This document shows, piece by piece, positions 45,991-64,000 of a DNA stretch of 64,000 nucleotides. Numbering within the stretch: the stretch's first letter is position 1; each line of letters opens with the position of its first letter. The DNA is from Basidiobolus meristosporus CBS 931.73 (Eukaryota > Fungi > Basidiobolomycota), in assembly GCA_002104905.1 (NCBI GenBank), contig MCFE01000098.1, forward strand, positions 62,001-126,000, in the 5' to 3' direction. The position numbers and the translations under genes are program-made. The notes beneath the pieces are model-generated. The model was not told the DNA's origin. It ran no database searches and saw only the letters and a program-made list of their open reading frames with translations.

Positions 45991-46719
45991 ACCTTCCTAG
46001 TTACAGGTCATAACCTAACATTCATGTAGATCTACCCTACAACAGCTCCCCGCAAAGCAAGCGAACTCTCTGTAGGAAACCCCTCCCCAAACAAGCCCTA
46101 ATCCAATTTTGAAGAGTCAACTTACCACCATATTCCAGCCTCTACTTGTCTCATGCATTAACACGTCCCATCTTAAGCAAACACTACCAGGGCAGCAACA
46201 GCCCGGATTTATTCAAGCAATCCATCCTACGGGAAGATCATGTGATGGCCGGAAATGAACCCACGTATGTCCCGATTTCCCATTCTCCGACATGTCTGGC
46301 ATGTTGGGGCCCTACTGAAGATGCGGCTACCCGTGCAACAAACGAAGATCGAAACGGTATTGGAAGGGACGGGAACCTTGAGGTGTCAGAGGGAACCCAT
46401 TCGATCACGCCATCGCTCATCACCAGGTGGCAAATCAAGTGATCCGAACTCACACACCGTTGTAACTTGACCAATCTCGGGAAGAATCAGGCGATTGGCG
46501 AGAGGGATCCCCGTCGTAGCTACCATGATACCAAACCCGGTTGGTCCAGCCGATACCCAGTTACCTTGGGTATTTAAGTTAATAATAACCGCGATGCAGC
46601 GTAAAAATATCAGCACACGACCGACGACTCGCGTCACTCATTGGCGAGGGGTTATTATTATCCTCACTCGGTAGGGGAATATATATAAGGTGCGTGACAA
46701 CCTACGGACTTGGGTAACG

Positions 46720-47576
46720 ATGGGCCGCAAGAAGATCAAGGTAACCCAGCCGACCTGCCTTCCTTTGGTATCCTCGACGATCTGATCCTTACCTTCGTCC
46801 CCAGATAAAAACCATCGAGAACGATCGGCAAAAGACCGTCACCTTCACCCGTCGCCGAAGCGGTCTGATCAAGAAGGCCCACGAGCTGGCGGTGTTGTGC
46901 GACTGCAAGGTTGTCCTGCTCATGTTTGACGCCAGGGATGCATGTCATATGGTACATTCTCTTTATCTACACTGTCTTGTCTATCTCATCTCACCCCGTC
47001 CCATGCGTCCGAGTAGTATTCATCCGAGGACGACCCGGAGGAGCTGATCCACAAGTACTACCACAAGGAGTTCAACACCGTCGAAGGGAAGGTAAGCGTT
47101 TGCTTTGGTTCGTCCGGTACGGGAATGGGCTGATGACGCTTTTCCAGCGCAAGGGCAGCAAGGCCAGACCTGAGGACAGGGACGCTCGCTCCACTGTGGT
47201 GAACGAATACCGGATCACCACCAACGGGGAGGGGTCGGAGAACATCCAGGTGAAGCAAGTGAGGAATCTTCACAACCCCGGGTCGATCCTTCTACCCCTC
47301 GAGCAGCCCGTAGTCGGCTCTTCCCAGCCCTTCATGCCGTTGCCACCGGCCATCCCTACCCTCGAGGACTACTCTATCATCCCGGTGGAGCATGAGGACA
47401 ACTATCACCATACCGATCCCGGATACCTGAATCAATTCGGAGAAGCTAGGCCCTTGCTGGAGTATCCCGCCACGGAATCCGAACCATACGGAGAGATGAA
47501 ATACTTCTATCAAATCCCAACCACCAGGCCGTCGCTCTACGAAGCCAACAGCTACCAGTCCCATCCGCCGTTCTGA
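46720..47576 (+). CDS. MEF2-type MADS-box transcription factor, 4 exons (46720-46740, 46805-46951, 47017-47091, 47148-47576), ~223 aa
   Basis: Spliced N-terminus MGRKKIK|IKTIENDRQKTVTFTRRRSGLIKKAHELAVLCDCKVVLLMFD..|YSS. GT-AG introns of 56-65 nt. TATA-like ATATATAAG at ~46681. Confidence 0.9.
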
Positions 47577-47685
47577 CCGGGCCCTGTTGGTGTATATAAT
47601 TGCTGTATACCTTCTTATCACTACATACGCATCGCTCTCGAGATATCTACCTAATAAATTCCCCTTATCAACAACCAGGTGGGAC

Positions 47686-49076
47686 TTACAAGCCTCTGAT
47701 GAATCTCCCCAACTTCTCGGTTTCTTCCCGAGCGGCTGCCTTGCAGTGGTCGGGGGTGGTCGGCTCGGGATCCCCCGCTCGGAACTCGTGTGGACCCTCG
47801 TCTAGCTTGTGCAATTCGTAGGAGTTCGGAGGTTGCGCGTGGGATTCTTTGGCAGGCATGCGATAGAACGATGAGCCAGTGACCTCACATCGGTGGGACC
47901 CAAACATCTTCCACACCGCCCACTGCATAAACCGAGCGTGTGTCGAAGGGCAAAGCCCGGGGGAGTGGATCTTCAATGGGGTCGAGTCATCCTCCTCCAC
48001 GCAATACGTGACAATCAGTCTCTCACGGACGACCAACAAGGAGTTGTGGAGCGCGGGGTCCATCAGGAACGCCACTAAATTAAGGACACCTAGGAGAGGG
48101 TTCTCAGCAGGGGCACTCGGAAAACATTCACTCGCTTCTTACCTGGCAGATCGGTGCCAATGACCGACCAGTAGTTGATTTGAGGATTCATCGAGTGTTG
48201 GAACTGCAACCACAGCTCCATCAAGATGAAGCCACCCTGGGTGATGATCGGGATGAGGGTGTAGAGGGCGATCCTGGCGACCAAGCGGTTGATGGTCTTC
48301 TGGGTCTTTCTGCGGCGTGGTTCGGTCGTCTCGAGCCCGCTCAACGAGTAGTTCCTATCGATGTTGGAGATCCTGCGTAGCCTCATCTCCAGTTTGATGA
48401 TCACCAGGGTCACCACCACCAGACAGTAAATCGACCCGGCCACCACCCAAAACAAGAAAGAGCCCCATTCCCACACCTTCGTACGCGTGCTGGAGTACCT
48501 CTTCCACCAGCACACCCCGACATTGTCGTCCCAGCCTACCCTCCCTGCGGCCCAAGCGGGGACGGTCGTGGCAAACGCAAGCGATGTGGACACCAGAAAG
48601 TAGATGCGCTCAAGGCTCGGGTGGTATGGTTTCTCGTGCAGAAAGACGTATTGCAGGTTGAATGCGATCATGCAGGTCAGGAAGATGTAGTAGTTGGTGA
48701 GAAAGATGATGGCCCTAGGAGGGGGTTAGTTCGGGTGGCCGCGGGAACGAGTCGACTTCACAGAAACCTACCAGGCGGAAAAGTCGCACGCAGGCCCGCT
48801 CACCGCAACGAAGGTGAACAGAATGTAGACGATCGCCTTGAGCACGTCCACCGCGGATATGGCAGCAGTCAGGCGTAGGGAAACTCGATCCATGAGCTTC
48901 GGCTCGAAGGCTCGGATCGAGAAGTAAATGACGAGCACCAGGGAGCCGCATATTATGGACGCGGAGTTCAGAACGACATTGATGATGGTCACCGCGCGGT
49001 TTTCATGATCCCCCTTCAACACAAGGTCGTAGCCCGGGTCGAAATCCCAGGAATTCAGCGAGGTCGTTGTTACCAT
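47686..49076 (-). CDS. GPCR-like 7TM protein (Git3/cAMP-receptor-like), 3 exons (49076-48772, 48714-48143, 48089-47686), ~426 aa
   Basis: Hydrophobic segments plus family-like motifs: RVSLRLTAAISAVD, TM3 Cys in GPACDF, GWDDNVGVCWW, LYTLIPIITQ, GVLNLVAFLMDP. Exon lengths sum to an intact frame. Confidence 0.8.
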
Positions 49077-49413
49077 GAGGAGAGAGACGGTGCCGTAAAA
49101 AAACTGGCTATCCGGCCCCGGTCAGGTAGTTATACTCTCTTGCCATTCGGGTCACACATGGTTCAATTGGCTGGCAGTGATAGAATTTAATCTTCGTTCA
49201 CCTTGCAACCCCATCGGCCAGTCCCGGTTACACAAGAGGACATTGGTCCAGAACTAACGTATGGAGGCTATCTGATGGCGATTTCTCTAGGAAGGCTATT
49301 GAGTGGTGATTTCTGGTGTTACCCGAAATACCAGTCTTGATGACGATTCGTGTGGTAATTCGTGTGGTAACGATGGTTTATTATTATTATAACAAAACGG
49401 TGGCAATCTAGAA

Positions 49414-52165
49414 CTAGTATTCTGCATAGCGCACTTCGCCATTATCCATCACCCATTCACAGTACTTTCTCAAGAACTCATCCTTCATGCCCACCGTCTC
49501 GCTATCGCCGATGACACAGAGGTGACGCTTCGGGCGGGTGATTGCCACATTCAGACGTCGGGAATCCGAGAGAAATCCAACCTCCCCGGAGTCGTTGGAT
49601 CGAACCATCGAGAAGATCACCGCTTCTATTGGACATCGTCGATTAAGTAAGCGAGCCAGCCACAAACAGATCTCGATCACCTACCTTTTTCTCGTCCTTG
49701 GAAGCCGTCCACTAAACAATGCCATTGGGTCAGTAGGGAAGTGTAGTCGATGTTATCATAGCAATGACCCACCGGAGCCTATTTCGAGTTCTGGATAAGC
49801 CTCCTTCAAGGCTAGCGTCAGCATCTTGACTTGGGCGTTGTACGGGGTGATCACGGCGATGTCCTCCTCGTGGAGCCCTGCTTCGATGAGACTTTTGACG
49901 TGCTCCACCACCACAGTGACCTCCCCCTCGTTGTATTTACTGTCGCCGTCCTTCTCGCTGTCCCCCGCCTCGGCCAGCTCGTTCATCCCCGCATGGGCCG
50001 TGTCAATGAACACCAGTGGGGCGAGGGTGTTGTCGGTCTCCTCGACGTCCGGAATCTGGCTGAGCAGTCGTTCACGGACCGACGCATGCGCCACCAGCTT
50101 GTCTTCGTAGAATTCCATCGAAGGGAATTTCATGATCATGTCGTGCATCCGATATTGCGTGGTCAGCATGTACTTCACCTTGCTTCCGTAAACAGCGAGC
50201 ATGCGATCAAACAGGGTGATCTCCAGGCTTTTTCCGGAGGAGGGGTCGGGTCGCTCGGTGGGGGAGGAGGGGTTGTTGCGATTGGATTTGAGGGACTTTA
50301 TGGTTGGCGGCAGCTGCAGATGATCCCCGGCCTATTCACAACAACAATGGTCAGGGATGGTTACGCACGGATCACAACTTGGATGGCGGTTACCAAAATC
50401 ACTTTCTCGGCCTTGAGAATGGCGATCCAGCATTCCTAATTAGATCAGAGAAGCATTGGTTAGTGCGCGAAAGGTGCGTAGTCCCGAGATCCCTGCTTAC
50501 AGCTAACAATACAAGTGGTTAGAGGGGATCCATGCTGTGACAAATGATTCCAATCCCACCTTCCAGCGCCTGTGTTGCTTCGTCAATGATCACAACGTCA
50601 AACTTCCGGTTCTTCATGGTCTTGCTTCCACACCTGCGACAAATCTCGCATTGTTATTCCCTGCAAAGACGGCCAAGTTGGAGGGGCCTTACCCATTCAG
50701 GGTGCTCAGGATCACCGGGGTCTCCTCGAGCAGCTCATTCACCACCCTCCCTTCCCGCTCCCTGAATTCTTTCTTGAGGTCCTTGAGCTGCTGGTAAAAG
50801 CCCTTTCTCTCGGAGCGGTTCCTCGACTTCTGAATACTCGCCATGGTCTGGTCCATCTCCTTCCGTATGTCGCTCACCAGTTGCCCTTGATCACACGTTT
50901 GTGTCACGACGTCGAGGGCGTGCTCCATCACTGCAGGCAAGATTCGCGCAGGATGGCCGACTCGCAGAATATTGATTCGGCATTTGGCCAGCCTTTCGAC
51001 CAGATTGTCGACCGAGATATTCGAGGGGCCACACACCAAGACCTTTTTTTCCTGCTTCACCAGCTGTCGGATGATCTCGATCAGCGTATACGTCTTACCC
51101 GTCTAGCCAGGTTGAAAGCGCTGTTTAGCCGCATGTCTTCACTAGGAAACATAAGATTACCTACTCCTGAGCACAATGGACATGAGTAAGTGGGCCGTAG
51201 CCGGGAAGCCATGATGAATCTCTAACCTGGCGGGCCGTGGATCAAGGCGATCTCGTTGGAATTCAGCCCGAATTTCACTGCTTCCTTCTGCGAGTCGTTC
51301 AGATTCTTGTCGAAGAAGGCGATTTTGTTGAATTTTGTCGAGGCTGATGGGGGCTGGAGATTGAAGAGAACCCGAATCAAACTGGTCTCCCGCGCTCGCT
51401 TGAGGTCCATCATGGCCCATTTCATTCTGAAATTGGAAGGCCTTAGCTATGGTTTGCATATGCATGTTTGCTATCGGTCTACCTTTCGTAGCTGATATTG
51501 TTGGCCAGCTTTGTTCTGATCGAATACCAATAAAAGTGGTGAGTGCCTACTCTATCCAATTAATAGTACGCTTCCACCATACATTTTACATCTGTCCTCC
51601 CATTCAACTGGTATCTCCTCCTTCACTGCTACGGTGATAACCGTATCCGTGACCTTCAGTACAACCCCGTCGACGAAAGGAATGGTTTCGTTGGGCTTCA
51701 AGGGTGCCCCGCTTGTAGAACCGGAGCCGGTGGTGACATTTTTGGCGACAGCAAGAGTAGTTCCGCTTGGGGTGTTTGCGGAAACGCGAAGATCTTCGGT
51801 GATTGCAATAATATCTCCAGAGCGGATGCGATGTGGTAGAAAGGCTGAGAGATGCAGGGGCGGCTCAAAGTCAACGACGCTTTGTAATAAGAAATATAAC
51901 ATGTAATAATAATATAAACTCCAGTTAGTCGACTCCTCTCAATCTCTAGACTACGATTGGTACTTCCAAAAAGCGAACATCAGATCTCGTACCTCTTTCC
52001 GCCAAGACCGGTTCGAAGTGCTGTAATGCGCAGACCACCCAAGGCAACTCCACGTCTCTGCAGCTGTTGTATCGATTTTTGACCTAGTAGTTCCGAGTTC
52101 TCATCGATTTCTAGTTGTCTTTCTTTTTCCAACAGGTCCAGTTGGTTCTTTACAAACGTCTCCAT
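49414..52165 (-). CDS. HCS1: SF1 UPF1-like helicase of the Hcs1/SMUBP-2 (IGHMBP2) subfamily, 12 predicted exons including two 2-nt micro-exons
   Basis: N-terminus FVKNQLDLLEKER..E..E and RTGLGGK. Motifs LNDSQKEAV, HGPPGTGKT, PSNISVDNL, IIDEATQA, AGDHLQLPPT, QYRMH, TPYNAQV, SVDGFQGREKEAV, RRLNVAITR. Confidence 0.9.
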
Positions 52166-52331
52166 TTCTAGTGCCCGCTTGGTGTATGGGGGAAATTGTT
52201 GTTAGAAACCGCTAAATAACCACAATAATGCAAGATATCAAATTTGGTGTGCATCCCATTTAGAAATTGTATTAACTGGTTGATTTTATTAGTATCTATG
52301 AAATCCAGACAATTCCCAGTGAATTCTGCAG

Positions 52332-55300
52332 TTACTCGCTATCCGACAATACAATGGCTGATCGCTTTCTCTTCGAAAGTGGACCTGGCCCGTCGCTTTG
52401 CTTACCCCGTCGTTTGGAGCTTCTTGTTTCTCGCTTGGTGATAACTGGGGATGGTTGTTCGTTCAGGGAGCCCAGCTCCTCCGCTGAGTTAGCCTCAATG
52501 TCTAGAAATACAATTAGTGAAAGAATCCGGAATGCTCCCAATCCCAAAACTAACTTACCGATCTCATCGATGTAGAAGACAGGATAGAGCTGCTGGAAGT
52601 CAAACGAATTCACAATGGTCTTGAGTGGAGCTGTGACTGGAGAATCTTTTAACAAACGCTCTTTACAGTGGATAAAATGTCAGTTCTTCTGAAAACTTGG
52701 GTGGCTCGGTTGTTGCGTCTAACATACCAGTAAACTCTTCCAGCGCACTCCCACTTAATTGAACACTCGACAGCCAAAGGTGCAGTGAGTCGAGATGGAT
52801 TTTGGAACGGTCCATTAATTCAGATTCGTCGTTCGCTCCCGCTTTGATTTCAGTGGCAATCTCAAGAAAGATGTCACCAAATGCCTGCGCCAGAGAGTCC
52901 GACCACAAGCGACTCCATTGCGTTAAACACGATCTGAAGAAAGGATCACTTCCACCGTCTCTGTGATTTCCTAGTGTAGACACGATCTGCTTGGTCGGGG
53001 GAACAGTACGGAGCAGGGCTAACAAGCCGTTCAGCGCCTCAGGGTTAGCTGGAAAGAAAACGTAAATAGGGAATTCGACATGAACAATCCATCAAAGCCT
53101 ACCATCTGCTTGTAGTTTATCAAATAACGAAGCAAAAAGCATCTCAACAAGCTCAGTTTTCCCGGCTATTTCAGCAGCGATGAGTTGCCAGACACAGATC
53201 TGCTCAAAGGTCTCCCATTCTAGGGTCGGTCCTAAAGATGGCAATGATAAGGGAGCTGGTCTTCGACCCTTTCGTGGACACTCTTACCAACTGATGTTTC
53301 GTAGTCTGACTGGCCGAACATGGTGAGCTCGTCAGAATTCAGGCTTGTCATGAGTTGATAGACCTGGCAACTGAAAGGTTAGTTATCAGGGCCCCAGATG
53401 GGCAAGGAAGCCAATTGTACCTGGGAAGGATCCATCATTGCAACGGCCAAATGCAAGAAGTCGGTGTTGCCAACACAGATTTCCGGGTATTTCTTGAATA
53501 TATACGGCAGAACTTCGTAAAACAGGTTGATTTGACTTTCTTGCAAGCTCTAAACACTAGCTGTCAGTCAACATGCCTATCGCCTATTGAGTAATGCTGT
53601 TACCATACCGTCATGTCTTTGAGTAGTTGCTCCTTCAATGGAGCATCCTCTACTGTGGCAAATGCGGTGTATTTGTCTAGCAGCACATTATCAAATTTGT
53701 TTTTAGAGCCGTGAACACTATGTCTAGATAGCAGTGGTCAGTTAACAGGAGCCTAGGACTTTCATGATCATCAACTCACTTAAATATGCACAGAATCCAT
53801 CGGAATCCCACTGCCTCGACTTTTCCGGAGATTTTGTTTAAAAGAGTCAACATCCGAGTTTCCAAAGCGGGATCTGATGAGGAGGTCCAAGCTTGATCCA
53901 ACAGAATACTTATCAAGTCTTTGCTCTCTTCATCCTGTGTAAAATAATCTTGGTCCAGATCGGTTAAGGTGGATTTTCTCACGGCTCTAGATAAAGAAGG
54001 GGCGAGGTTTTCGGGCGGGACAGCCTGTGGCGAGGTGTTCAGTCAAAATGAATTGGTAAACAATACGTGTTCTTGCGTACCGTCTTCGCAAATACTTCTA
54101 GAATCTCTTTCAAAAGAGTCTCGGATTTCTCGATCTCTTCATTTGTGGTGGCCTCTCTAAAATCTTTGAGCAGGTCACCGAAAAGCCATAAGCTGGCTTC
54201 ATCGACACTTTCTTCTTCTTCATCCTCCTCCTCTTCTCCTTCCCCTTCCCCTTCTTCTTCCTCGTTCTCTACATCCAAGCTTGCTTCATTCTCTGTCCCC
54301 TCTTCATACTGCTCCTCGGTTTCGAAGTCTTCATTTGCACCCTCTAAAACATCAGACTCTTGTTGGTTCTCCATCCCGTTGAAATCCATACTCATCTCGT
54401 CGTAGGGGTTGGAATTTTCGTTTTGATCGCCCTCAATAAACCCGGATTCATTGTTCTCTCCTTCGGTCAAGCCTAGAGAAGGGTTAATCAGAGGGGTCGT
54501 TATATTGGTCTATGATCAAAAGATCATCGCTACCTGAATAACTAGACGCTACATCTTCTTCTGCAGTCTCCTCTGCACCATTCTCTTCTTCAGGATCTTC
54601 TTGGAAGGCTTGTCCTAGTTGGCCAGTAAACGAGCTCTGGATATCCATTTGGAATGGATCTTTATCATCCTCGAATCCGCTAGAGGTTGCTTGTGGCTCA
54701 GAAGAATCAAGGGAGGGATTGTTGAGGCTGTTCTGATTGACCACATTTCCAAGTATTTGGCTGATTCCTTGTCGGACGCTTGAAGGTATCGCTGGATTCC
54801 CCAACATATTGTTAAACGACCGGATAACTCCCTTCTCCATGATCGTTTGCATGGCGGAGCGTACATGCAGTTTAATATCGTTGGCTTTTTCCGGGTAGTA
54901 TTCCTCTACTACAAATTGTAGAAACTCGAGTAGGATACTAGTAATGAATGCATACTTCTCCACGGATCTCTCCATCAGCAACACGGCGGGTTCTGAAAGC
55001 GATGGGTCAACAGGTGAGGGGTTTTGAATAAATTTAACTGAGGGCACGTACCGATGTTCATAATGTTGTCTATGTTAGGATCGTAGAACAGCCAATCGTA
55101 AAACAATGCTAACTTAGCATTGCTAGCGGCAGCATGAGACTACAAGCCATATCAGCATAGCTCGTCGTGTGAGAAAACAATGAATCTCTAGCGTACCTTG
55201 ATCCCTCTAATCAGCCCACCAATGATTACATATCTAGGCACAATATCCGACGCTAGGACTGCATTTGTGGGATGGTAAACGCCACATATGTATCGAATGA

Positions 55301-56811
55301 GATCACAATACAGCGTCTCGGAATCTGGCGTTGACAGGTAGCGGCTGATGAACCACTGAAGATTTCGCTGATGGCGGCCCCACCGTAACTAGTGTCAATC
55401 TAGAGGTTAGTTCCATGGTATTGTTGACCACCTCTACATAAAGACTCACGCTTTCCATGATGTGAAGAAGCTTAAGCTCCATATCAAACGTTAGTCTGCT
55501 TTGCAGATAAATCTTTGGAGTAGGTACTGAGAGAATGTGCCAAACACCTAGATTGCCGCATAGTAAATTAAGTGTCCAGCACCTAGGTTCAGCACCGCTT
55601 ACCTCGAAAGTGTGGACTTATCTTCTCGGGCCGATAGAAGAGGTCGATCCAGATCTGTTCGAACTCGGGGATGCGCGCTACATCCTGTAGAGCTCGAATT
55701 AGATCGCGCCCGATGTTGGAACACTCTATGAACTTTGCTCTGGTTAGCTGGTGGTTATCGAAGGTGAGCATCTGCCAGTGGAACGTGGCTTACTTTTTCG
55801 CGTAGCAGATACACGCAGAAATCTGTCTCCTTCTGCCGTAGCTCCAGATATTTCCCATGATCCAAGATCACTCTTATAAACGTATAAAAGGATGATGCAA
55901 TGACTACAGGAAATAGATTCATCCACTGTCTAGAGCACCCATCTTTGCTTAACAACTAAATCCTTTTTAAAGCCAAGTGAGACGAAGACCAACCTATTCT
56001 TGGAGAGTAAATCGACCATGGCTTCGCAGAATGACAGGTTCTTCTGTGTTACATCGCCACCTGGACAAATACGTGAGTAATCCAGTAAAGCCCCCATCAA
56101 TTGACCTCGACATCTCACCTCTGATTTGGCGGAGCAATATCGTATACAAACTGTCTATTCCCTGCACGTTCATTCCTGTCAGTTGATCAACCATCCATAG
56201 AAGCTTTGAAAGGTAACGCTCTAGTTAGCACATGGCTCCACTACAGGCAAAGATAAGGACCAACCTGGCTTCTGGTTTTGACATTCATCTTGCAAAATCT
56301 GGGCAGGGCTGCCAAGTACTTCAACTTCCCTACGATATACGCAAATCCATCTCTAACAATGAAATTGAGATATCTAAAATACTGGAAACCACTTTAAGGT
56401 TGAGGCCGGACAATTCTCTCTCGAGGCTGGAAGTTGGATATTACCTCGTTGGCGTTCGCACTATCCGATAGAATACCGTAGAGTAGACCTTTTGCAAGTT
56501 GCGCATGCTTGGTCATACTTTGCGAGGCCTGGCAGGTAGCCGGAATGTTGTCAACACGAGTCCCAGGTGAACATATTCAACTGAAGCAAACCTTTTCCTG
56601 CAATTCGTTATGTAGCTCGATCTCTGATTTTTCTGCTATGGTCGTCTTGAGCTCCTCAAAACAAGCAGCCATTTCCTACACGATCAAAATAATCAGCACA
56701 GCCCTTCACGAAACTAAGCTAGACAATCGAAGGTACTTTATCCAACGCATCTATATCATCCACTGGTTCTAGATCCAACAGAATGGAACAGATCTCACTT
56801 GTCGTTGTCAT
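52332..56811 (-). CDS. INTS3: Integrator/SOSS complex subunit 3 homolog, ~20 exons
   Basis: Spliced translation gives [77 protein letters not shown] and NPEAL, matching INTS3 motifs from memory. Long acidic insert and basic C-terminus. Confidence 0.88.
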
Positions 56812-57113
56812 GTTGCTTTACAGACAAACCTACGTGAGGAACAACGATAGAGTATGAATCGCAGATAGGATTGTTTCAGAATTGGAGGATTTTCAAATTG
56901 CCTACCAAATTTATCGAACAAAAGGATTGATCAATGTTGAAGTTGGATTATGTCCTCAGTCACATCGTTCAGGAGAATCGTCCCCAAGGGTTGGCAAATA
57001 TTTACCAGCCTTCGAGAGAGGTGGAGGGGAGAGATCGATTCTTTTTTATTGTGGACTTCTATCAAAACTCCGGCTTATATGATGGAATATTAAGGCTTCT
57101 CTGAGTTACGAGG

Positions 57114-58476
57114 TCACTGGGCTAGCACCTCACTGATTGCTGATTTGGAGTTGTCTTTGGGGGGACCGGCTCCATATTTCCACTTGGGATGAATGGGCTT
57201 TCGATGTATGAATACTTCAAACCCGTTCAACACTCCCCCCAACTGTAAAAACGCTGCAGCGAACACGTACACCCAAGCCTGATGATACCCTTTAAGTTGT
57301 AGTATCATGTGAATGATGGATGGAGTGAAGTGAAACACGTGAAGGAATAACGCTATTCCCAAATTCTCCGTATGTTTTCTATGTTTTTGCACGGCGTTCA
57401 TGATTGTCGTGCTGTAACGGTGGTTCGAGTTGATACTCAAAGTCCGCTTGACCTTATCTGGAGAAGGGACTTCTCGGCGTGCCTCAGCAGTAGTCTTGAA
57501 AGTCATATCATGTATGACCAACAGATAGCACACCAACACTACAAACAGAACAATGTAATGAACGCTAAGGAACAATTTCAGAAACACCCGGCCAGAGGAC
57601 GTATGTTCGTTCACTAAGCACCTTGTAGCTGTGAATGAATATTAATCGTTCGGAAAGTGGAGGCTTTTTGGCTACATACCAATACATATCTGGACCAAAG
57701 CTCCGGGTGTACACACCAGCAATGGCTGTTCCAAGGCAACTAAGGCCGCATCCTATCCAGACCTTCCAATCCCACCTGCCCAGATAGACATCAATTTTAC
57801 GAACCAGTTGTAAGTAGGTGACTACAGCAACGGTTCCAACAACCGTCATTTCTATGAAGGTTCCGAGATAAATGATGCCCCCTATAACGGCACAGGTCCT
57901 GGAGGACGGCAGCTCATCCCAGTACATGGTATCCGCCACCATGAACAGAGTGATGCATCCCAAGAACAAATCCAGGATCGCAATATAAAACGGGAATCGA
58001 ATGGAGGAAGATAGGTGTGGTTTCTTGGATTCATTTTGATTCCGATACTTGATCTCCTGGAAGTCAATGTAGGACATATATATGACTCCCGACGAAGCGC
58101 ATACATTCAACGTGGCGGTGATGGTGGTCAGCATGTAAAAGAAAATGGATCCATTTGGAGCGAAGTCTGAGAGGAAGTGGTTCTCACCGAGCTCCTCCAC
58201 GTTTGTGCCGTTGTGGGCCTGCTTGGGCTTGTGTCTCTCCTCGCCATGCCTTCTATGACCACCCCCGTGGCTAGTCTGGTTTTTTGGTTTCTTTGGGAGA
58301 TCGCTCTGAGGCTTAGGCCGACTTGAATTAGTGCTAGCAGCCGGGGTCACTGGCTCACGGCGACGAACGAGGTGTACTGAAGTGGAAGCATCCTGGACTG
58401 TTGAAAGAGATAGATTTTTGTATAATACAGTGCAAATCAGCAATAGTCCAACTAGAATATAGCCAATCCGAGTCAT
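57114..58476 (-). CDS. GPCR-like 7TM protein with an N-terminal signal/anchor and polar ectodomain, 2 exons (58476-57680, 57621-57114), ~434 aa
   Basis: SSIRFPFYIAILDL, RTCAVIG, GRWDWKVW, FGPDMYWC and LQLGGVLNGF..F resemble Git3/CAR-like receptors of early-diverging fungi. Confidence 0.75.
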
Positions 58477-58526
58477 ACAAACTAGGCCCTAATTGCTATG
58501 TTATGGCCTTCGTTAAAACAAATGGT

Positions 58527-58568
58527 GGGTTAAGTGGGTTAGCCGGGTTAGTTGGGTTAGTAGGTTAG
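58527..58568 (+). repeat. Five GGGTTAG-like units with ~9-bp period
   Basis: GGGTTAA-GT-GGGTTAG-CC-GGGTTAG-TT-GGGTTAG-T-AGGTTAG. Confidence 0.7.
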
Positions 58569-59051
58569 AAAAGGGCGGTGGAGGAGACAAAGGGAAAGCC
58601 AGGGCAGATCAAGTCCACATATATAGATAAATGCGGGTGAGAGCGTGTGTGGTGGAATATCAAGATACAGAACATCGCTATCGAAGACAATGGTATTTCC
58701 CATCAAACCAGATTCACACGCTCCAATGCATGGCGACAATGGTCTGCACGCGGTCTATCCGTCAGAGCATTATCAAGATGTCGCAAACAATCGAAGATAT
58801 TTCCCCTATGTGGAGCACAATCTCCCGCCCTGCATGAACGTTGATGCAACTCTAATCCTGGCATTGTACCTCTCCAGACAAGCGTGGCCTACGGTTGTAA
58901 TGACTTTATTGTGCTGGAGTGGAGTCTAGAAATCACACCAGTGTGATGCCCATTAGCCACACTCAACGATGAACATGAATCAAGAGAAAAATTACAGAGA
59001 TACGATGCATTTGATTTTCATTATATAACTGATATACAAGTAGCAAGTAGA

Positions 59052-60281
59052 TTATTGTATGTTGCACTTCGGGGCTGGTGACACTTCTCTGGCACCAGGA
59101 GACATGAGGTCCTCGATGTCTGCAGTCCCGCAGTCTGCATTGGCGCCTCTCTGGGCCTGGGTCTCGAGTACGAGTTGTCCGCATGCTCCGGAAACATCCT
59201 GGCCTTTTTCCTGACGAACGGTACAGCGAATGTTGTATTTGTTTTTCAACGTGTTCTTGAAATATTCTGTGCTCTCAGCTCCGGGGGCACTGAACTCAAT
59301 TTCTGGGCTGTAGATTGGGTTCCAGGGAATCAAATTCACCGTGACATCTCTGTCCCTGAGAAGCTCGCCGAGCTCGTCGATATGCTCCGGTAGATCGTTG
59401 ACACCGGATAATAGTACATACTCGATGAACACCTTATTCCCAGTCTTCTCCTGGTAGGTGTCAATGGCCCCCATCAATTTGTCTAGTCTGTATGACCGGG
59501 CACTAGGGACCAACTGCTCTCGGATTTCCTGGTTAGGGGCATGCAACGATAGCGCTAAAGACACTTTGGGCAAGTCAGTTGCGAGCTTCAGAATGTAAGG
59601 AATAACGCCAACAGTGGATACGGTCACTCTAGAAGGCTTGAGGCCAAAGTAACGAGAGTCAATCATGAGTTTGACTGCTTGGGTGACGTTCTTGTAGTTG
59701 TTGAGAGGTTCGCCCATGCCCATGAATACGACATTACGGATGTCCGCTTCTTTTCTCGCGTGCATCAGTTGCTCAACAATTTCGGCTGCGGTCAGATTGC
59801 CTTGGATTCCCATGGTTCCGGTCGCACAAAAGGTGCAGGCCATTTGGCAGCCCACCTGACTAGATATACACAAGGTGGCTCTTCTACTTGTACCATCAGC
59901 AACCAATTTTGGCTTCGTCTCCCCCTCCGAGGCCTCATCGTTCTCGGGGGCAGGCTTTAAACTTAACGGCTCGTAAAACATAATGACCGACTCCACTTCC
60001 AAACCGTCTTGCAAACGAACAACCAGCTTGATGGTGTCACCCGACTTGGAGACTTTCTTATGGATTACCTTACTCGTGCTGAGTACGTAGTTTTGGGACA
60101 GATAGTCCTTCGCCTTCTTTGGGAAATCCACAATCTCGTCATAGTCAGTGGCGGAGCGAAGAATGAGATTGGAATATAGGCTATGAAGATGCTGGGGGCG
60201 AATCTTCAACTCCTCGAACGCTTCTTCTACCGAAGCTTGGTCGAATATGGACTGGGGATTTAACACTCTTTTGGGTGGCAT
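59052..60281 (-). CDS. rlmN: RlmN-type radical-SAM RNA methyltransferase, intronless, ~409 aa (an upstream in-frame ATG is at 60347)
   Basis: CISSQVGCQMACTFCATG (CxxxCxxC plus the first catalytic Cys), NVVFMGMGEP, TVSTVG, LALSLHAPN, EYVLLSGVND, NLIPWN, and GACGQL (second catalytic Cys). Confidence 0.92.
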   Translation of the reverse strand: MPPKRVLNPQSIFDQASVEEAFEELKIRPQHLHSLYSNLILRSATDYDEIVDFPKKAKDYLSQNYVLSTSKVIHKKVSKSGDTIKLVVRLQDGLEVESVIMFYEPLSLKPAPENDEASEGETKPKLVADGTSRRATLCISSQVGCQMACTFCATGTMGIQGNLTAAEIVEQLMHARKEADIRNVVFMGMGEPLNNYKNVTQAVKLMIDSRYFGLKPSRVTVSTVGVIPYILKLATDLPKVSLALSLHAPNQEIREQLVPSARSYRLDKLMGAIDTYQEKTGNKVFIEYVLLSGVNDLPEHIDELGELLRDRDVTVNLIPWNPIYSPEIEFSAPGAESTEYFKNTLKNKYNIRCTVRQEKGQDVSGACGQLVLETQAQRGANADCGTADIEDLMSPGAREVSPAPKCNIQ

Positions 60282-60710
60282 GTTGTTCGACTGGACACGC
60301 TCGTCACGTATGAACTTTAAGGTTGGAAATTTTTTTATTTTTTTCATTTTCCAGGGATTTTTTCACCAGTGAGTGCATCCGTCCTGTGGGGATCATTGGT
60401 GGGGAATTCACATGCGGCGATTCGTGATGGTCCGACGCAATATTGATTGTGAGGATAAACCTTAAATCTCCGATGCGATTTCTCCTAGCCAGATTGAAAC
60501 ATACACACACACTTGGGCGTCAATGGCGCCAAGGCTCCGTGACTGTTTGTAGCTCTTGGTAGCTGATTTCTACAAATCATGGGCTACGGCCTGTTTGTCT
60601 CCACTTGGTACAGTCAGGTCAATGCAGATCATACGAATTTGAAGAGAGATGAAACAAAACTCCACCATCCTACCAATGAACATCAGGTGTTGCCCTTGGG
60701 ATGTATGGTG

Positions 60711-60734
60711 GTGCACGTCACCGAAGTGACGTCA
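60711..60734 (+). promoter_or_regulatory. Paired CRE/ATF-like motifs (CACGTCA and TGACGTCA) upstream of DUF4449-like gene 1
   Basis: Conserved with the same spacing at 63502-63525 upstream of the paralog, while the spacer has diverged. Confidence 0.5.
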
Positions 60735-60788
60735 ATCCGACTGCTCTATATAACCAGGAGAGGCCGTGATACAGCCAGCATTTCAACT

Positions 60789-62942
60789 ATGGACAACAAA
60801 CAGAACGAGCTTCCCCCTAGAGTGCACCATCCAGCATCCAAGGAACAAGAAGCGCTCCAGAAGAAGGAACACATTACCGAAGTGATTCATGCCGCGCAGC
60901 AGGGAAAACTCCCCACCACTGTACAGCTGACCGATGCCATTGAGCAACTTCAGGAGGATAATTCTCTTCACCATGCCTCAGCCAACATGAGCGCCTCTGG
61001 CCGAAGGGTGATGGCCGATACGGAAAACCTCTTGGACTCCACCAAGAGATTGTTGACCGAGAAGAATGCCGATGATCAGATCCAGAATATCATCTACCAC
61101 AGCACTCAAGGTGGAATGGCTGCCCGCTCCGGAAACGAGATCACCCAAACCAAAGAGCAACTCTCCGACACTGCAGGTCAAACAAAAGGCCTGCTCTCCG
61201 ATGGAGCGGAAAAGATCACCCGTGTTGGCTGGTTGCTTGTGACCTCATCCCAATTCCGCCGATTGATGAATGATGTGACATCCATTTTCCAGGAATTAGT
61301 TGCAAGCAACATCCCTAATCACCCAGAGCAGGAGGAGACCGTCAGAGACACGAGTAGTTCGAAGTACACCAACGACTCTGGAATTCCCCATGACCATGAG
61401 GCAACAGTTGACGAGGCAGGCGAACGTGTCCAAGAGACTTTGCAGAAGAGCGGCAAGCCACTCTATCAAAATGCGAAGGAGACGGTGAAACCGTACATCA
61501 AACAAGCTGAGGACGGGGATATGCCGGTGAAGGAGGCGGCTAAGGAATCGATCCAGGAAATGAAGCAGGGCATTCAGCAACGGTTGAAAAACGTACGTCT
61601 CTCATCGAAACAGGAAGATCACCTCATCAACCGCATGAGGAATGTCTTCCGGGAGCTCCAGGAAAACCCCGAGTTCCAGGAAGCTATCGATGAGCTATCG
61701 GATATCGCCAGCACCCTGAAATCCCATGGTATGGATGCACAGTCGCTTGTGGCAGAGACAGCACAAACTAAGAAAGAGGCGGGGGGTGATGACTTGACAA
61801 TCGCTCGAGCCAATGCCAAGGAACTAGTGGAGAACTTTGCCGGCAATAAGTCGCTTGATCCCTTGATACAGTCCATCAGCAAGCTACATAGCGAGTACTC
61901 TGTGGACGAGGAGCTGTCGGCGTTCGTCAGAGACTTGAAAGAGTTCATCCGTCGCTCCATTCGCGAGAGCCAGTTCACCGATCGACCAGAGTACAAGAAG
62001 GAGGTGAGCGGGTTCATTGACAAGGGACAAAACATCATGGACCGCAAGTACCGTCCACACTTCCAGCAGATCAGCAACGAGGTCACTAGCTTCAATACGG
62101 CTCTGCAGCACGATCGGACCACGCAGGCGTTTGCACGTGATCTGGAGAAACTCACGCAAGACGTGTTCCTCGATGAGAGCGGGAAGCCAACCATCAAGTA
62201 CGATCTTGTCAAGGACTTTGCCAAGCTGGTTCCGGTGATTGCGAAGAAACTGGAGTATCTTCCGCTACCAAGGGTGGAGAACTCGGACGAACAGTTTGAT
62301 GTGATACTCGACAACATTGTACTCAAGTGCTCAAACATCGCCCCTGACTACATTCATCTCAGAACAGACACCCTGGTAGACACCAATCCGGAAACCAAGC
62401 AGAACTTCCACAACAACGTCTACATCAAGTTCGCAAACATCCAAGTGGAGGCGAAGAACATGGCATTCTACTACAAGAAGAAGACGTTCCCCAAGATGAC
62501 TGACGTGGGATACATTGACCTCACGATGCCCGATGACGGCATTACCATGGACATGACTTTAAACACCACTCCTGCACCCGACCCGGTAACGGGGCGCAAC
62601 CATGTGTATGAAGTCAAGCAGGTGGGAACATCAGCCAAGGATCTGAAACTAAAGATTCACAACTCCAAGCACGATGTCCTATACAAACTGCTCTCACCGA
62701 TCATCAACTCCAAGGTCCGAAAGATCATTGAGGAGCAGGTTCCAATCAAAGTACACGAAACCATGATGAAGATCGAGGAACAGCTAGTGAAAAACATGGA
62801 AGAAAGCAAAGCGCGTATTGGCTCCAGCACTGACCCATCCAGGATAGATCCTGCCCAGCTAACCAAGGAGCCCAACCCTCAATGGGGATCTCAGGCTTTT
62901 GACATGCAGCAACCAACGGTGCAACACATACGTGAGCGCTGA
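60789..62942 (+). CDS. Uncharacterised fungal protein of the DUF4449/DUF5923 type, intronless, 717 aa
   Basis: Long helical region (GKLPTTVQLTDAIEQL, LVTSSQFRRLMND, VFLDESGKPTIK) followed by LPLPRVENSDEQFDVILDNIV and a beta-rich C-terminus. The family assignment is from memory. The start was chosen by alignment to the paralog. Confidence 0.65.
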   Translation: MDNKQNELPPRVHHPASKEQEALQKKEHITEVIHAAQQGKLPTTVQLTDAIEQLQEDNSLHHASANMSASGRRVMADTENLLDSTKRLLTEKNADDQIQNIIYHSTQGGMAARSGNEITQTKEQLSDTAGQTKGLLSDGAEKITRVGWLLVTSSQFRRLMNDVTSIFQELVASNIPNHPEQEETVRDTSSSKYTNDSGIPHDHEATVDEAGERVQETLQKSGKPLYQNAKETVKPYIKQAEDGDMPVKEAAKESIQEMKQGIQQRLKNVRLSSKQEDHLINRMRNVFRELQENPEFQEAIDELSDIASTLKSHGMDAQSLVAETAQTKKEAGGDDLTIARANAKELVENFAGNKSLDPLIQSISKLHSEYSVDEELSAFVRDLKEFIRRSIRESQFTDRPEYKKEVSGFIDKGQNIMDRKYRPHFQQISNEVTSFNTALQHDRTTQAFARDLEKLTQDVFLDESGKPTIKYDLVKDFAKLVPVIAKKLEYLPLPRVENSDEQFDVILDNIVLKCSNIAPDYIHLRTDTLVDTNPETKQNFHNNVYIKFANIQVEAKNMAFYYKKKTFPKMTDVGYIDLTMPDDGITMDMTLNTTPAPDPVTGRNHVYEVKQVGTSAKDLKLKIHNSKHDVLYKLLSPIINSKVRKIIEEQVPIKVHETMMKIEEQLVKNMEESKARIGSSTDPSRIDPAQLTKEPNPQWGSQAFDMQQPTVQHIRER

Positions 62943-63185
62943 AGTGCCGATTTTCTCGCGACCCGATTCTGACCAACAGATGAGTTCGCCTCGAGATGCC
63001 TGATTTTGTGGTACTTTCTTCTGTACATTCCTGACCTTCATCGTAAATAAACCTTGCGCATTTGCAGCGTTGTCTTGTCTTGATAGCTATTGGTAGAGTA
63101 GGGTTAATTTATTTGACAAAATTGCTCCAGGAATTGCCGCTTGTTTCAGTTTTACAATGGTCAAAAAGGCATCAAGGATAGTTAC

Positions 63186-63242
63186 ATATATATATATAGG
63201 CAGAGGGAGAGGGAGAGGGAGAGAGAGTATGTGTATGTGTGA
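63186..63242. repeat. Compound microsatellite (AT)n, (GAGGGA)n, (GA)n, (TATGTG)n
   Basis: Directly visible. Confidence 0.7.
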
Positions 63243-63501
63243 GGTAAGCGAAAAAGTAACACAAAGGAAGACAGTTGAATGCATGTAAAAATGGCGAAGG
63301 GAAGAGGGGGGTTGGTGGAATGTTTTTCTCTGGTCCGACGGTGTGGAGAGAGGATCTGGACTAACACTCTGGTATGTTGCTCAACTGAACACGCTTACCA
63401 CTTATGGCCTTTAAAGTTGGAATCTTTTTTATTTGTTTCATTTTCCAGGGATTTCTCACCATCTAGTGGAGATCATTGGTGGGGAATTTACATGCATGGT
63501 A

Positions 63502-63525
63502 GTGCACGTCACTTAATTGACGTCA
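63502..63525 (+). promoter_or_regulatory. Paired CRE/ATF-like motifs upstream of the DUF4449-like paralog
   Basis: GTGCACGTCA-CTTAAT-TGACGTCA, about 60 bp before the ATG. Confidence 0.5.
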
Positions 63526-63585
63526 ACCCGACTGCCTGATCTAACTGAAAGGCCGTGACACCGTGACACAATTAGCATTTCGGTT

Positions 63586-64000
63586 ATGGACAACAATCAG
63601 AACGAACTCCTTCCCCCTAAGGGGCCCTATCCAGCATCCAGGGAACAAGAAGCGCTCCAGAAGGATGAGCACATTACCGAAGTGATTGAGGCCGCAGAGC
63701 AGGGAAAACTCCCCACCACTGTACAGCTGACCGATGCCATTGAACAAATCGAGGAGGACATTTCACTGGACCATGCTTCGATCAACATGAGCGCCTCCGG
63801 TTGGAGGGTGATAGCCGACACGGAAAAATTCTTGAACTCTACTAAGAGATTGTTAGCTGAGAAAGATGCCGGTGACCAGTTCCAGAATGTCATCTACTAT
63901 GGCATCCAGGGCGAGAGGGCTGCCCGCTCCGGAAACGAGATCACCCAAACCAGAGAACAACTGTCCGACATAGCAGTCCAAACAAAGGGCCTACTCTCCG
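63586..64000 (+). CDS. Tandem paralog of 60789-62942 (runs off the window)
   Basis: MDNNQNELLPP...EQGKLPTTVQLTDAIEQI aligns with gene 1, and the frame is open to the window end. Confidence 0.85.
   Translation, partial: MDNNQNELLPPKGPYPASREQEALQKDEHITEVIEAAEQGKLPTTVQLTDAIEQIEEDISLDHASINMSASGWRVIADTEKFLNSTKRLLAEKDAGDQFQNVIYYGIQGERAARSGNEITQTREQLSDIAVQTKGLLS

What the first reader, a model, noticed from the sequence alone, without database searches (positions are those of the whole stretch)
50501..50502. Second 2-nt micro-exon (CT), just after Walker B of the same helicase
Seen: the exon ends ..QALE G| at 50560 (phase 1), but the next clear exon starts in phase 0 with GAA TGC TGG (ECW) at 50435. 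Between them lies ..CTAAC..TTAG|CT|GTAAGC..CTAAC..TAG: a 57-nt intron, 2 nt, and a 65-nt intron, each with a canonical branch point. Inclusion gives DEATQALEAECWIAIL, matching the family consensus; skipping shifts the frame. Two such exons in one gene suggest the splicing machinery of this organism handles them routinely.
Basis: partly seen in the sequence, partly recalled or inferred. Interest (0 to 1): 0.8.

Follow-up and report, generated by a model that had tools for sequence, protein, structure and literature searches.

The report
Ancient two-letter exon in helicase gene
A DNA-helicase gene of the fungus Basidiobolus meristosporus can only be read in frame if two letters (CT), standing alone between two short introns, are spliced into the message; the same two-letter exon sits at the same codon in four other early-diverging fungi and breaks many public gene models, but such tiny exons are already known from other fungi and plants.

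Summary
On the minus strand the motif II exon ends ..GCG CTG GAA G at 50560. A 57-nt intron follows (50559-50503), then CT (50502-50501), then a 65-nt intron (50500-50436). The next exon starts GAA TGC TGG at 50435. Both introns are GT-AG with a CTAAC branch site. Including CT gives ..DEATQALE-A-ECWIAIL.., the spacing found in 116 of 116 homologues.

The gene is the Hcs1/IGHMBP2 helicase of Basidiobolus meristosporus CBS 931.73. I found the same AG|CN|GTAA layout in the same alanine codon in B. ranarum, Syncephalis fuscata, Lobosporangium transversale and Linnemannia gamsii. The introns around it are unalignable. Mucor and Umbelopsis have no intron here and carry the two letters contiguously. 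Jimgerdemannia keeps only the upstream intron.

Between the two Basidiobolus species both flanking exons change almost only synonymously in their own frames, so the frame must be restored. No RNA run was listed, so inclusion in mRNA is inferred, not shown.

The kind is known: 57 two-nt exons in Coprinopsis and one-nt exons in Fusarium and Arabidopsis. The scan had already noted the sister two-nt exon (GA, Walker A) in this gene. Verdict: a real new member of a known kind, with deep conservation and moderate interest.

The parts
49414..52165 (-). Whole Hcs1/IGHMBP2-type SF1B helicase gene: 12 exons, 11 GT-AG introns of 56-113 nt, CDS 2031 nt (676 codons plus stop).
   Evidence: Exon-by-exon phase bookkeeping found no in-frame stops. 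Single exons hit Pfam AAA_11 and AAA_12 above the cut-off and SMUBP-2_HCS1_1B below it. The best solved structure is SMUBP-2, 4B3F/4B3G, E=7e-32.
50560..50633 (-). Exon 7 (74 nt). It encodes ..CGSKTMKNRKFDVVIIDEATQALE (Walker B / motif II) plus the first base (G) of the alanine codon, and ends in phase 1.
   Evidence: Against B. ranarum there are 10 synonymous and 1 non-synonymous codon differences in this frame, and 0 synonymous in either wrong frame.
50503..50559 (-). Intron A, 57 nt: donor GTGGGA after a consensus exon end AAG, CTAAC branch site 16 nt from the acceptor, acceptor TTAG.
   Evidence: An intron at the same position and phase is present in B. ranarum, Syncephalis, Lobosporangium, Linnemannia and Jimgerdemannia.
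50501..50502 (-). The 2-nt micro-exon CT. It supplies bases 2 and 3 of the alanine codon (G+CT) between Glu and Glu-Cys-Trp.
   Evidence: Orthologous micro-exons read CT, CG, CG and CT, always Ala. The intronless Mucor and Umbelopsis genes read GAAGCG/GAAGCT directly followed by GAATGC.
50436..50500 (-). Intron B, 65 nt: strong donor GTAAGC, CTAAC branch site 24 nt from the acceptor, acceptor TTAG.
   Evidence: In all five species the donor starts GTAA (GTAAGC, GTAAGC, GTAAAT, GTAAAT, GTAAGT).
50394..50435 (-). Exon 9 (42 nt, phase 0), encoding ECWIAILKAEKVIL.
   Evidence: Against B. ranarum there are 5 synonymous and 1 non-synonymous codon differences.
49773..50331 (-). Exon 10 (559 nt), starting AGDHLQLPPT (motif III) and covering most of the AAA_12 domain. 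This exon was used as the search query.
   Evidence: The public 222-aa model P0270 starts inside this exon.
51165..51166 (-). The sister 2-nt micro-exon GA in Walker A (GPP-G-TGKT), flanked by introns 51226-51167 (60 nt) and 51164-51103 (62 nt). It is the subject of another finding.
   Evidence: It is also present in B. ranarum, Umbelopsis vinacea (GA) and Jimgerdemannia (GG). The two chytrids examined have only the phase-1 intron.

Best explanation
CT at 50502-50501 is a genuine, probably constitutive, 2-nucleotide exon of the Basidiobolus meristosporus Hcs1/IGHMBP2 helicase gene. Two complete short U2-type introns (57 and 65 nt) abut it. Splicing both out joins G + CT + GAA and gives the alanine that follows motif II (DEATQALE-A-ECW).

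Shown here:
- the anatomy;
- the need for exactly two extra bases;
- purifying selection on both flanking frames;
- the same arrangement at the same codon in five species of three subphyla, which makes it ancestral to Zoopagomycota and Mucoromycota, with later loss of one or both introns in other lineages.

Inferred mechanism: with introns of about 60 nt, fungi recognise introns across the intron (intron definition), so exon length does not limit recognition. The acceptor AG of intron A and the donor of intron B lie 2 nt apart, so the two spliceosomes can hardly assemble at once. The introns are therefore removed one after the other. Either order leaves a normal substrate for the second step. 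Intron B cannot use consensus exon bases at -2 and -1 (C and T/G) and has a strong intronic donor (GTAAG/GTAAA) in every species. Intron A has a perfect exon side (AAG|) and degenerate intronic bases. This is the compensation expected for real U1/U6 recognition. My weak guess is that intron B goes first.
For: - Anatomy and phases.
- No acceptable canonical single-intron alternative.
- Invariant family spacing D-E-x-x-Q-x-x-E-x-x-[CS]-W in 116 of 116 homologues, Ala the commonest residue at this place.
- Same AG|CN|GTAA at the same codon in B. ranarum, Lobosporangium and Linnemannia and Syncephalis, with exactly one AGNNGT per gap and always GCN.
- The second base varies synonymously (T/G) while the first base C is fixed.
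- Introns are 49-58% identical in gap-laden alignments, against 82-83% for the flanking exons, between the two Basidiobolus species.
- Synonymous to non-synonymous codon differences are 10:1 upstream and 5:1 downstream, each in its own frame.
- Intronless Mucor and Umbelopsis carry the two bases in place.
- Jimgerdemannia has intron A only, with CT fused to the next exon.
- Shuffle probabilities are 0.0001-0.008 per species.
- The 124-nt gap is twice the usual intron size of this gene (56-67 nt).
- The public models of Syncephalis (P0004) and Lobosporangium (P0227) contain the Ala, which only the 2-nt exon can supply.
- Precedents: 57 two-nt exons in Coprinopsis from long reads (PMC12230235), a 1-nt exon in Fusarium (PMC12940212) and in Arabidopsis APC11, with a sequential-removal model (PMC4674806).
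Against: There is no transcript evidence for Basidiobolus. No RNA run was listed, and no transcript-derived protein turned up in the protein searches. The donor of intron A in this species (GTGGGA) is weak. Splicing order and constitutive use are inference only. Glycine is tolerated at this position in some homologues, so protein conservation alone cannot exclude a non-canonical junction that yields E-G-E.
Confidence: 0.88

Rival explanations
1. A single intron of about 122 nt with non-canonical boundaries restores the frame without a micro-exon. Examples are GG..AG, TG..TA or GT..TT, giving E-G-E or E-E-E.
For: Gly and Glu occur at this position in a few homologues or models. Some public Mortierellaceae models read QALEEECW or QALEG...
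Against: It would need non-GT/AG or non-AG boundaries, and these differ between the five species. Meanwhile a canonical AG|CN|GTAA is conserved inside the gap in all five. A 122-nt intron would be twice the size of the gene's other introns. The synonymous T/G change in the micro-exon, with C fixed, is unexplained by this reading.
Confidence: 0.04
2. The micro-exon is used only part of the time. Skipping gives a frame-shifted, prematurely terminated message, so the site works as a splicing-level dosage switch for the helicase.
For: Skipping does shift the frame. The donor of intron A is weak in this species. Alternative use of 1-nt exons is described in plants (PMC8831610).
Against: Nothing here indicates regulation. 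The helicase is a conserved single-copy core gene. Several lineages replaced the arrangement by plain contiguous coding sequence, which argues against an indispensable regulatory role.
Confidence: 0.07
3. The gene is a decaying pseudogene, or the assembly has a 2-nt error inside one long intron.
For: Public annotation breaks the gene into fragments in both Basidiobolus species.
Against: All 12 exons are open and sum to a multiple of three. There is strong purifying selection on both sides. The same layout appears in independent assemblies of five species. The annotation breaks coincide exactly with the two micro-exons, as expected from gene finders that cannot model 2-nt exons.
Confidence: 0.01

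Closest known systems
Two-nucleotide and other exons of 3 nt or less in the long-read annotation of Coprinopsis cinerea (PMC12230235)
   Same: These are fungal internal exons of 1-3 nt (57 exons of 2 nt in 50 genes). Their omission breaks the reading frame, and they sit between short introns.
   Different: That is a Basidiomycota catalogue backed by long reads. Here the host is an early-diverging fungus, there is no RNA proof, and the evidence is conservation of one specific 2-nt exon across subphyla.
One-nucleotide exon of Fusarium CYP621A (PMC12940212) and of Arabidopsis APC11/VPS55 (PMC4674806, PMC8831610)
   Same: An ultra-short exon lies inside a conserved motif. It was deduced from a phase mismatch, from a gap twice the normal intron length and from intronless relatives used as length markers. 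The downstream donor is strong and conserved. Annotation is pervasively wrong. Sequential removal of the two introns is proposed.
   Different: Those exons are 1 nt and confirmed by RNA reads or RT-PCR. This one is 2 nt and unconfirmed at the RNA level, but it spans a much deeper divergence (Zoopagomycota to Mortierellomycotina) than the Fusarium case.
Stwintrons (spliceosomal twin introns) of filamentous fungi (PMC5639578, PMC12403724)
   Same: Two U2 introns are in direct contact and must be excised in consecutive reactions.
   Different: In a stwintron the inner intron interrupts a splice signal of the outer one, and nothing stays in the mRNA. Here each intron has its own complete signals and 2 nt remain as coding sequence.
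Zero-nucleotide recursive splice sites (ratchet points) of Drosophila, cited in PMC4674806
   Same: An acceptor AG is placed next to a donor GT, and removal is stepwise.
   Different: Ratchet points leave no exon bases and subdivide very long introns. Here 2 coding bases are kept and the introns are about 60 nt.

Membership tests
Ultra-short (3 nt or less) spliceosomal micro-exon | Internal segment bounded by a canonical acceptor AG upstream and a donor GT downstream, with each flanking intron carrying its own donor, branch site and acceptor. | tested here: met
   GTGGGA..CTAAC..TTAG | CT | GTAAGC..CTAAC..TTAG. The intron lengths of 57 and 65 nt fit the gene's range of 56-67 nt.
Ultra-short (3 nt or less) spliceosomal micro-exon | Its inclusion is required to connect the reading frames of the neighbouring exons and to restore the conserved protein sequence. 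| tested here: met
   Phase 1 meets phase 0. The only canonical alternatives delete motif II residues. 116 of 116 homologues keep the spacing. Both frames are under purifying selection.
Ultra-short (3 nt or less) spliceosomal micro-exon | Conserved in orthologues, with intronless orthologues carrying the same bases contiguously. | tested here: met
   Five species carry AG|CN|GTAA at the same codon. Mucor and Umbelopsis are contiguous here, and Jimgerdemannia is half-merged.
Ultra-short (3 nt or less) spliceosomal micro-exon | Present in the mature mRNA (cDNA, RNA-seq junction reads). | not testable with these tools
The look-up of sequencing runs listed no RNA run, so read laying could not be used.
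Hcs1 / IGHMBP2 (SMUBP-2) Upf1-like SF1B helicase | AAA_11 and AAA_12 helicase core domains plus the SMUBP-2/HCS1 1B domain. | tested here: met
   On single exons AAA_11 scores 87 bits and AAA_12 scores 117 and 60 bits. The 1B domain reaches only 19.5 bits on one exon, below the cut-off of 27. The B. ranarum fragment model carries PF21138.
Hcs1 / IGHMBP2 (SMUBP-2) Upf1-like SF1B helicase | The closest solved structure and the closest named relatives are SMUBP-2/Hcs1 rather than Upf1 or other SF1 helicases. | tested here: met
   4B3F/4B3G SMUBP-2 scores E=7e-32 against Upf1 at E about 5e-06. Relatives are named DNA polymerase alpha-associated DNA helicase A or SMUBP-2.
Stwintron | One intron interrupts a splice signal of another, and no base between them stays in the mRNA. 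| tested here: not met
   Both introns have complete signals of their own, and the two bases between them are needed as coding sequence.

The most novel reading that the evidence does not exclude
The two abutting introns form a regulated checkpoint rather than a passive relic. Ordered removal, or occasional skipping of the 2-nt exon, would tune the output of a replication-associated helicase through frame-shifted, decay-prone transcripts. This constraint would explain why the arrangement survived since before the split of Zoopagomycota and Mucoromycota.
Probability: 0.08. Interest if true: 0.65.

Novelty: new member of a known kind. Interest (0 to 1): 0.45.

Why it matters
The case shows that a 2-nt exon can be kept at one codon across three fungal subphyla, and that one gene can carry two of them.

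It is also a systematic annotation breaker:
- The helicase is cut into 2-3 false genes in both Basidiobolus genomes.
- 22 of 32 public Mortierellaceae models are wrong at this site: 11 lack the motif and 11 carry spurious inserted residues.

It offers a compact natural substrate of 57 + 2 + 65 nt for asking in which order two touching introns are removed under intron definition. It also gives a simple signature for finding more such exons in early-diverging fungi: a phase mismatch plus a gap twice the normal intron length. The general phenomenon is already documented in fungi and plants.

Tried and rejected
- RNA evidence: the look-up of sequencing runs listed no RNA run for 49400-52200 (cap 1), so read laying was never usable.
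- Transcript-derived proteins: I looked for unnamed Logan or ENA full-length proteins on mRNA-sized contigs in three word searches. None was from Basidiobolus or Mortierellaceae.
- All searches were exon by exon, by reference.
- Single-intron GT-AG, GC-AG and AT-AC solutions were enumerated and rejected, because all of them delete motif II residues.
- U12-type splicing was considered because this species is rich in minor introns (PMC10639083). It was rejected because neither donor resembles a U12 donor (the comparison with the U12 consensus rests on my own knowledge).
- Stwintron and ratchet-point readings were rejected because two coding bases remain.
- Deeper origin: two chytrids and Smittium lack the arrangement.

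Full report
**Observation**

Reading the minus strand, the exon that encodes ..FDVVIIDEATQALE ends with one extra G at 50560. It is followed by:
- a 57-nt intron (50559-50503, GTGGGA...CTAAC...TTAG);
- the two bases CT (50502-50501);
- a 65-nt intron (50500-50436, GTAAGC...CTAAC...TTAG);
- an exon that starts GAA TGC TGG at 50435 and encodes ECWIAILKAEKVIL.

I did the phase bookkeeping exon by exon, without joining the letters. It gives a 12-exon gene at 52165-49414 with 11 GT-AG introns. Ten of the introns are 56-67 nt long. The coding length is 2031 nt, a multiple of three. This holds only if both 2-nt exons are counted: CT here and GA at 51166-51165. The 124-nt gap around CT is twice the normal intron size of the gene.

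**Is a 2-nt exon needed?**

I enumerated all single GT-AG, GC-AG and AT-AC introns that would keep the downstream frame. There are four, and all delete conserved residues of motif II.

The spacing D-E-x-x-Q-x-x-E-x-x-[C/S]-W is kept in all 116 homologues that show the motif, out of the 150 best representatives. Alanine is the commonest residue at the position in question.

**Identity of the gene and the organism**

- The 186-codon exon 10 is 100% identical to a 222-aa model of Basidiobolus meristosporus CBS 931.73, and 80% identical to one of B. ranarum.
- Single exons hit Pfam AAA_11 and AAA_12.
- The best solved structure is human SMUBP-2/IGHMBP2, 4B3F/4B3G, at E=7e-32.
- Relatives are named DNA polymerase alpha-associated DNA helicase A, that is Hcs1.
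- Public annotation cuts the gene exactly at the two micro-exons. It gives three separate 'genes' in B. ranarum, and a 79-aa plus a 222-aa fragment in B. meristosporus.

**Comparative evidence**

I fetched the orthologous loci and read the same codon in each.

| Species (call) | Reading at the codon |
|---|---|
| B. ranarum (24) | GAAG \| intron of 69 nt \| CT \| GTAAGC intron of 74 nt \| GAATGTTGG |
| Syncephalis fuscata, Zoopagomycotina (34) | ..TTTTAG \| CG \| GTAAAT.. |
| Lobosporangium transversale (29) | ..GACAG \| CG \| GTAAAT.. |
| Linnemannia gamsii, Mortierellomycotina (29) | ..AATAG \| CT \| GTAAGT.. |
| Jimgerdemannia (34) | only the upstream phase-1 intron, with CT fused to the next exon |
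| Mucor lusitanicus, Umbelopsis vinacea (19, 34, 59) | no intron; GAAGCG / GAAGCT directly followed by GAATGC |
| Smittium, Polychytrium, Quaeritorhiza (19, 40) | no intron here |
| Cladochytrium (40) | a different intron, four codons upstream |

In each of the five gaps there is exactly one AGNNGT, and it always completes GCN, alanine. The first base, C, is fixed. The second varies synonymously (T or G). The intronless genes behave like cDNA length markers.

Between the two Basidiobolus species:
- the introns are 49-58% identical in gap-laden alignments, and the flanking exons are 82-83% identical;
- TTAG|CT|GTAAGC is unchanged;
- codon differences are 10 synonymous to 1 non-synonymous upstream and 5 to 1 downstream, each in its own frame, whereas in the wrong frames nearly all differences would change the amino acid.

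So both frames are translated, and two bases must be supplied between them.

In shuffles of each gap, an AG-CN-GTAA element that leaves two parts of at least 45 nt arises with probability 0.0001-0.008 per species.

The simplest history is that both introns were present before Zoopagomycota and Mucoromycota separated, and that one or both were lost later in several lineages.

**Annotation consequences**

The models of Syncephalis (P0004) and Lobosporangium (P0227) contain the alanine, and only the 2-nt exon can supply it. Among 32 Mortierellaceae models:
- 10 have the family spacing;
- 11 lack the motif;
- 11 carry spurious insertions. These begin with G, as if reading into intron A, or with A-V/A-S, as if reading CT and then continuing into intron B.

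**Mechanism (inferred)**

Fungi with introns of about 60 nt pair splice sites across the intron, so a tiny exon is no obstacle to recognition. The acceptor of intron A and the donor of intron B are 2 nt apart, however, so their complexes must clash. The introns are most likely removed one after the other, and either order leaves a normal substrate for the second reaction.

The donors fit real recognition. Intron A has the consensus exon side AAG| and degenerate intron bases (GTGGGA, GTAATA, GTAAAG, GTAGTA). Intron B has non-consensus exon bases and a strong GTAAG/GTAAA in all five species. The same feature is described for plant 1-nt exons (PMC8831610).

For the potato invertase 9-nt exon the downstream intron is reported to go first (cited in PMC4674806). 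I weakly favour the same order here.

**Comparison with what is known**

Exons of 1-3 nt are documented:
- 13, 57 and 27 exons of 1, 2 and 3 nt in the long-read annotation of Coprinopsis cinerea (PMC12230235);
- a 1-nt exon in Fusarium CYP621A, confirmed by reads (PMC12940212);
- 1-nt exons in plant APC11 and VPS55 (PMC4674806, PMC8831610).

This is therefore a new member of a known kind. It is not a stwintron or a ratchet point, because two coding bases remain. The new elements are this particular exon, its conservation across three subphyla, and its co-occurrence with a second 2-nt exon in one gene.

The sister exon (GA, Walker A) was already followed up by the scan (s1-206083). My loci confirm it in B. 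ranarum and add Umbelopsis (GA) and Jimgerdemannia (GG). The two chytrids have only the phase-1 intron there. The two micro-exons have different distributions, and of the species examined only Basidiobolus keeps both.

**Limits**

- No RNA run was listed for this stretch, so inclusion in mRNA, constitutive use and splicing order are not shown.
All searches were made exon by exon, by reference.
- Animals, Dikarya, Glomeromycotina and Phycomyces were not examined for this site, because the contig look-ups were exhausted.

Noticed in passing
window 51165-51166 (and L002:3828-4004, L008:1560-1812, L010:1108-1255, L011:1877-2195): The sister 2-nt exon in Walker A (G|GA|ACG) is also present in Umbelopsis vinacea (GA) and Jimgerdemannia (GG). 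It is absent from Mortierellaceae, Mucor and Syncephalis. Cladochytrium and Polychytrium have only the phase-1 intron in that glycine codon. The two micro-exons therefore have different phylogenetic distributions.
   Followed up: partly
L003:2984-5731 and L004:4275-5789: Public annotation splits this one helicase gene into three 'genes' in B. ranarum (170, 174 and 222 aa). In B. meristosporus it leaves only a 79-aa and a 222-aa fragment. The breaks coincide with the two micro-exons.
   Followed up: yes
Proteins P0225, P0230, P0238, P0393, P0395, P0396, P0398, P0403, P0407, P0409 and others: 22 of 32 public Mortierellaceae models of this helicase are wrong at the micro-exon site. Eleven lack the motif and eleven carry intron-derived insertions such as QALE-GST-ECW or QALE-AVSSS-ECW.
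   Followed up: partly
window 1-46000 versus 46001-64000: There is a sharp composition step. G+C is about 0.39-0.43 over the first 46 kb and 0.45-0.53 in the gene-dense last 18 kb. Other first-stage notes place transposon and LTR elements in the AT-richer part.
   Followed up: no
L005:2765-2796: Intron A of Lobosporangium transversale contains an uninterrupted run of about 32 A and is 164 nt long, roughly three times the Basidiobolus intron.
   Followed up: no
L003 and L004 flanks: Gene order around the helicase is conserved between the two Basidiobolus species. An Ints3-like gene lies upstream. Downstream lie an unnamed gene of about 430-450 aa and an SRF-type MADS-box gene.
   Followed up: no
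same genome, other pieces: Other first-stage notes report a 2-nt exon (AG) in a Ras gene, a 3-nt exon in a GGT gene, and 4-nt and 6-nt exons in a kinesin P-loop of this genome. I did not check them. If true, ultra-short exons are common in Basidiobolus.
   Followed up: no
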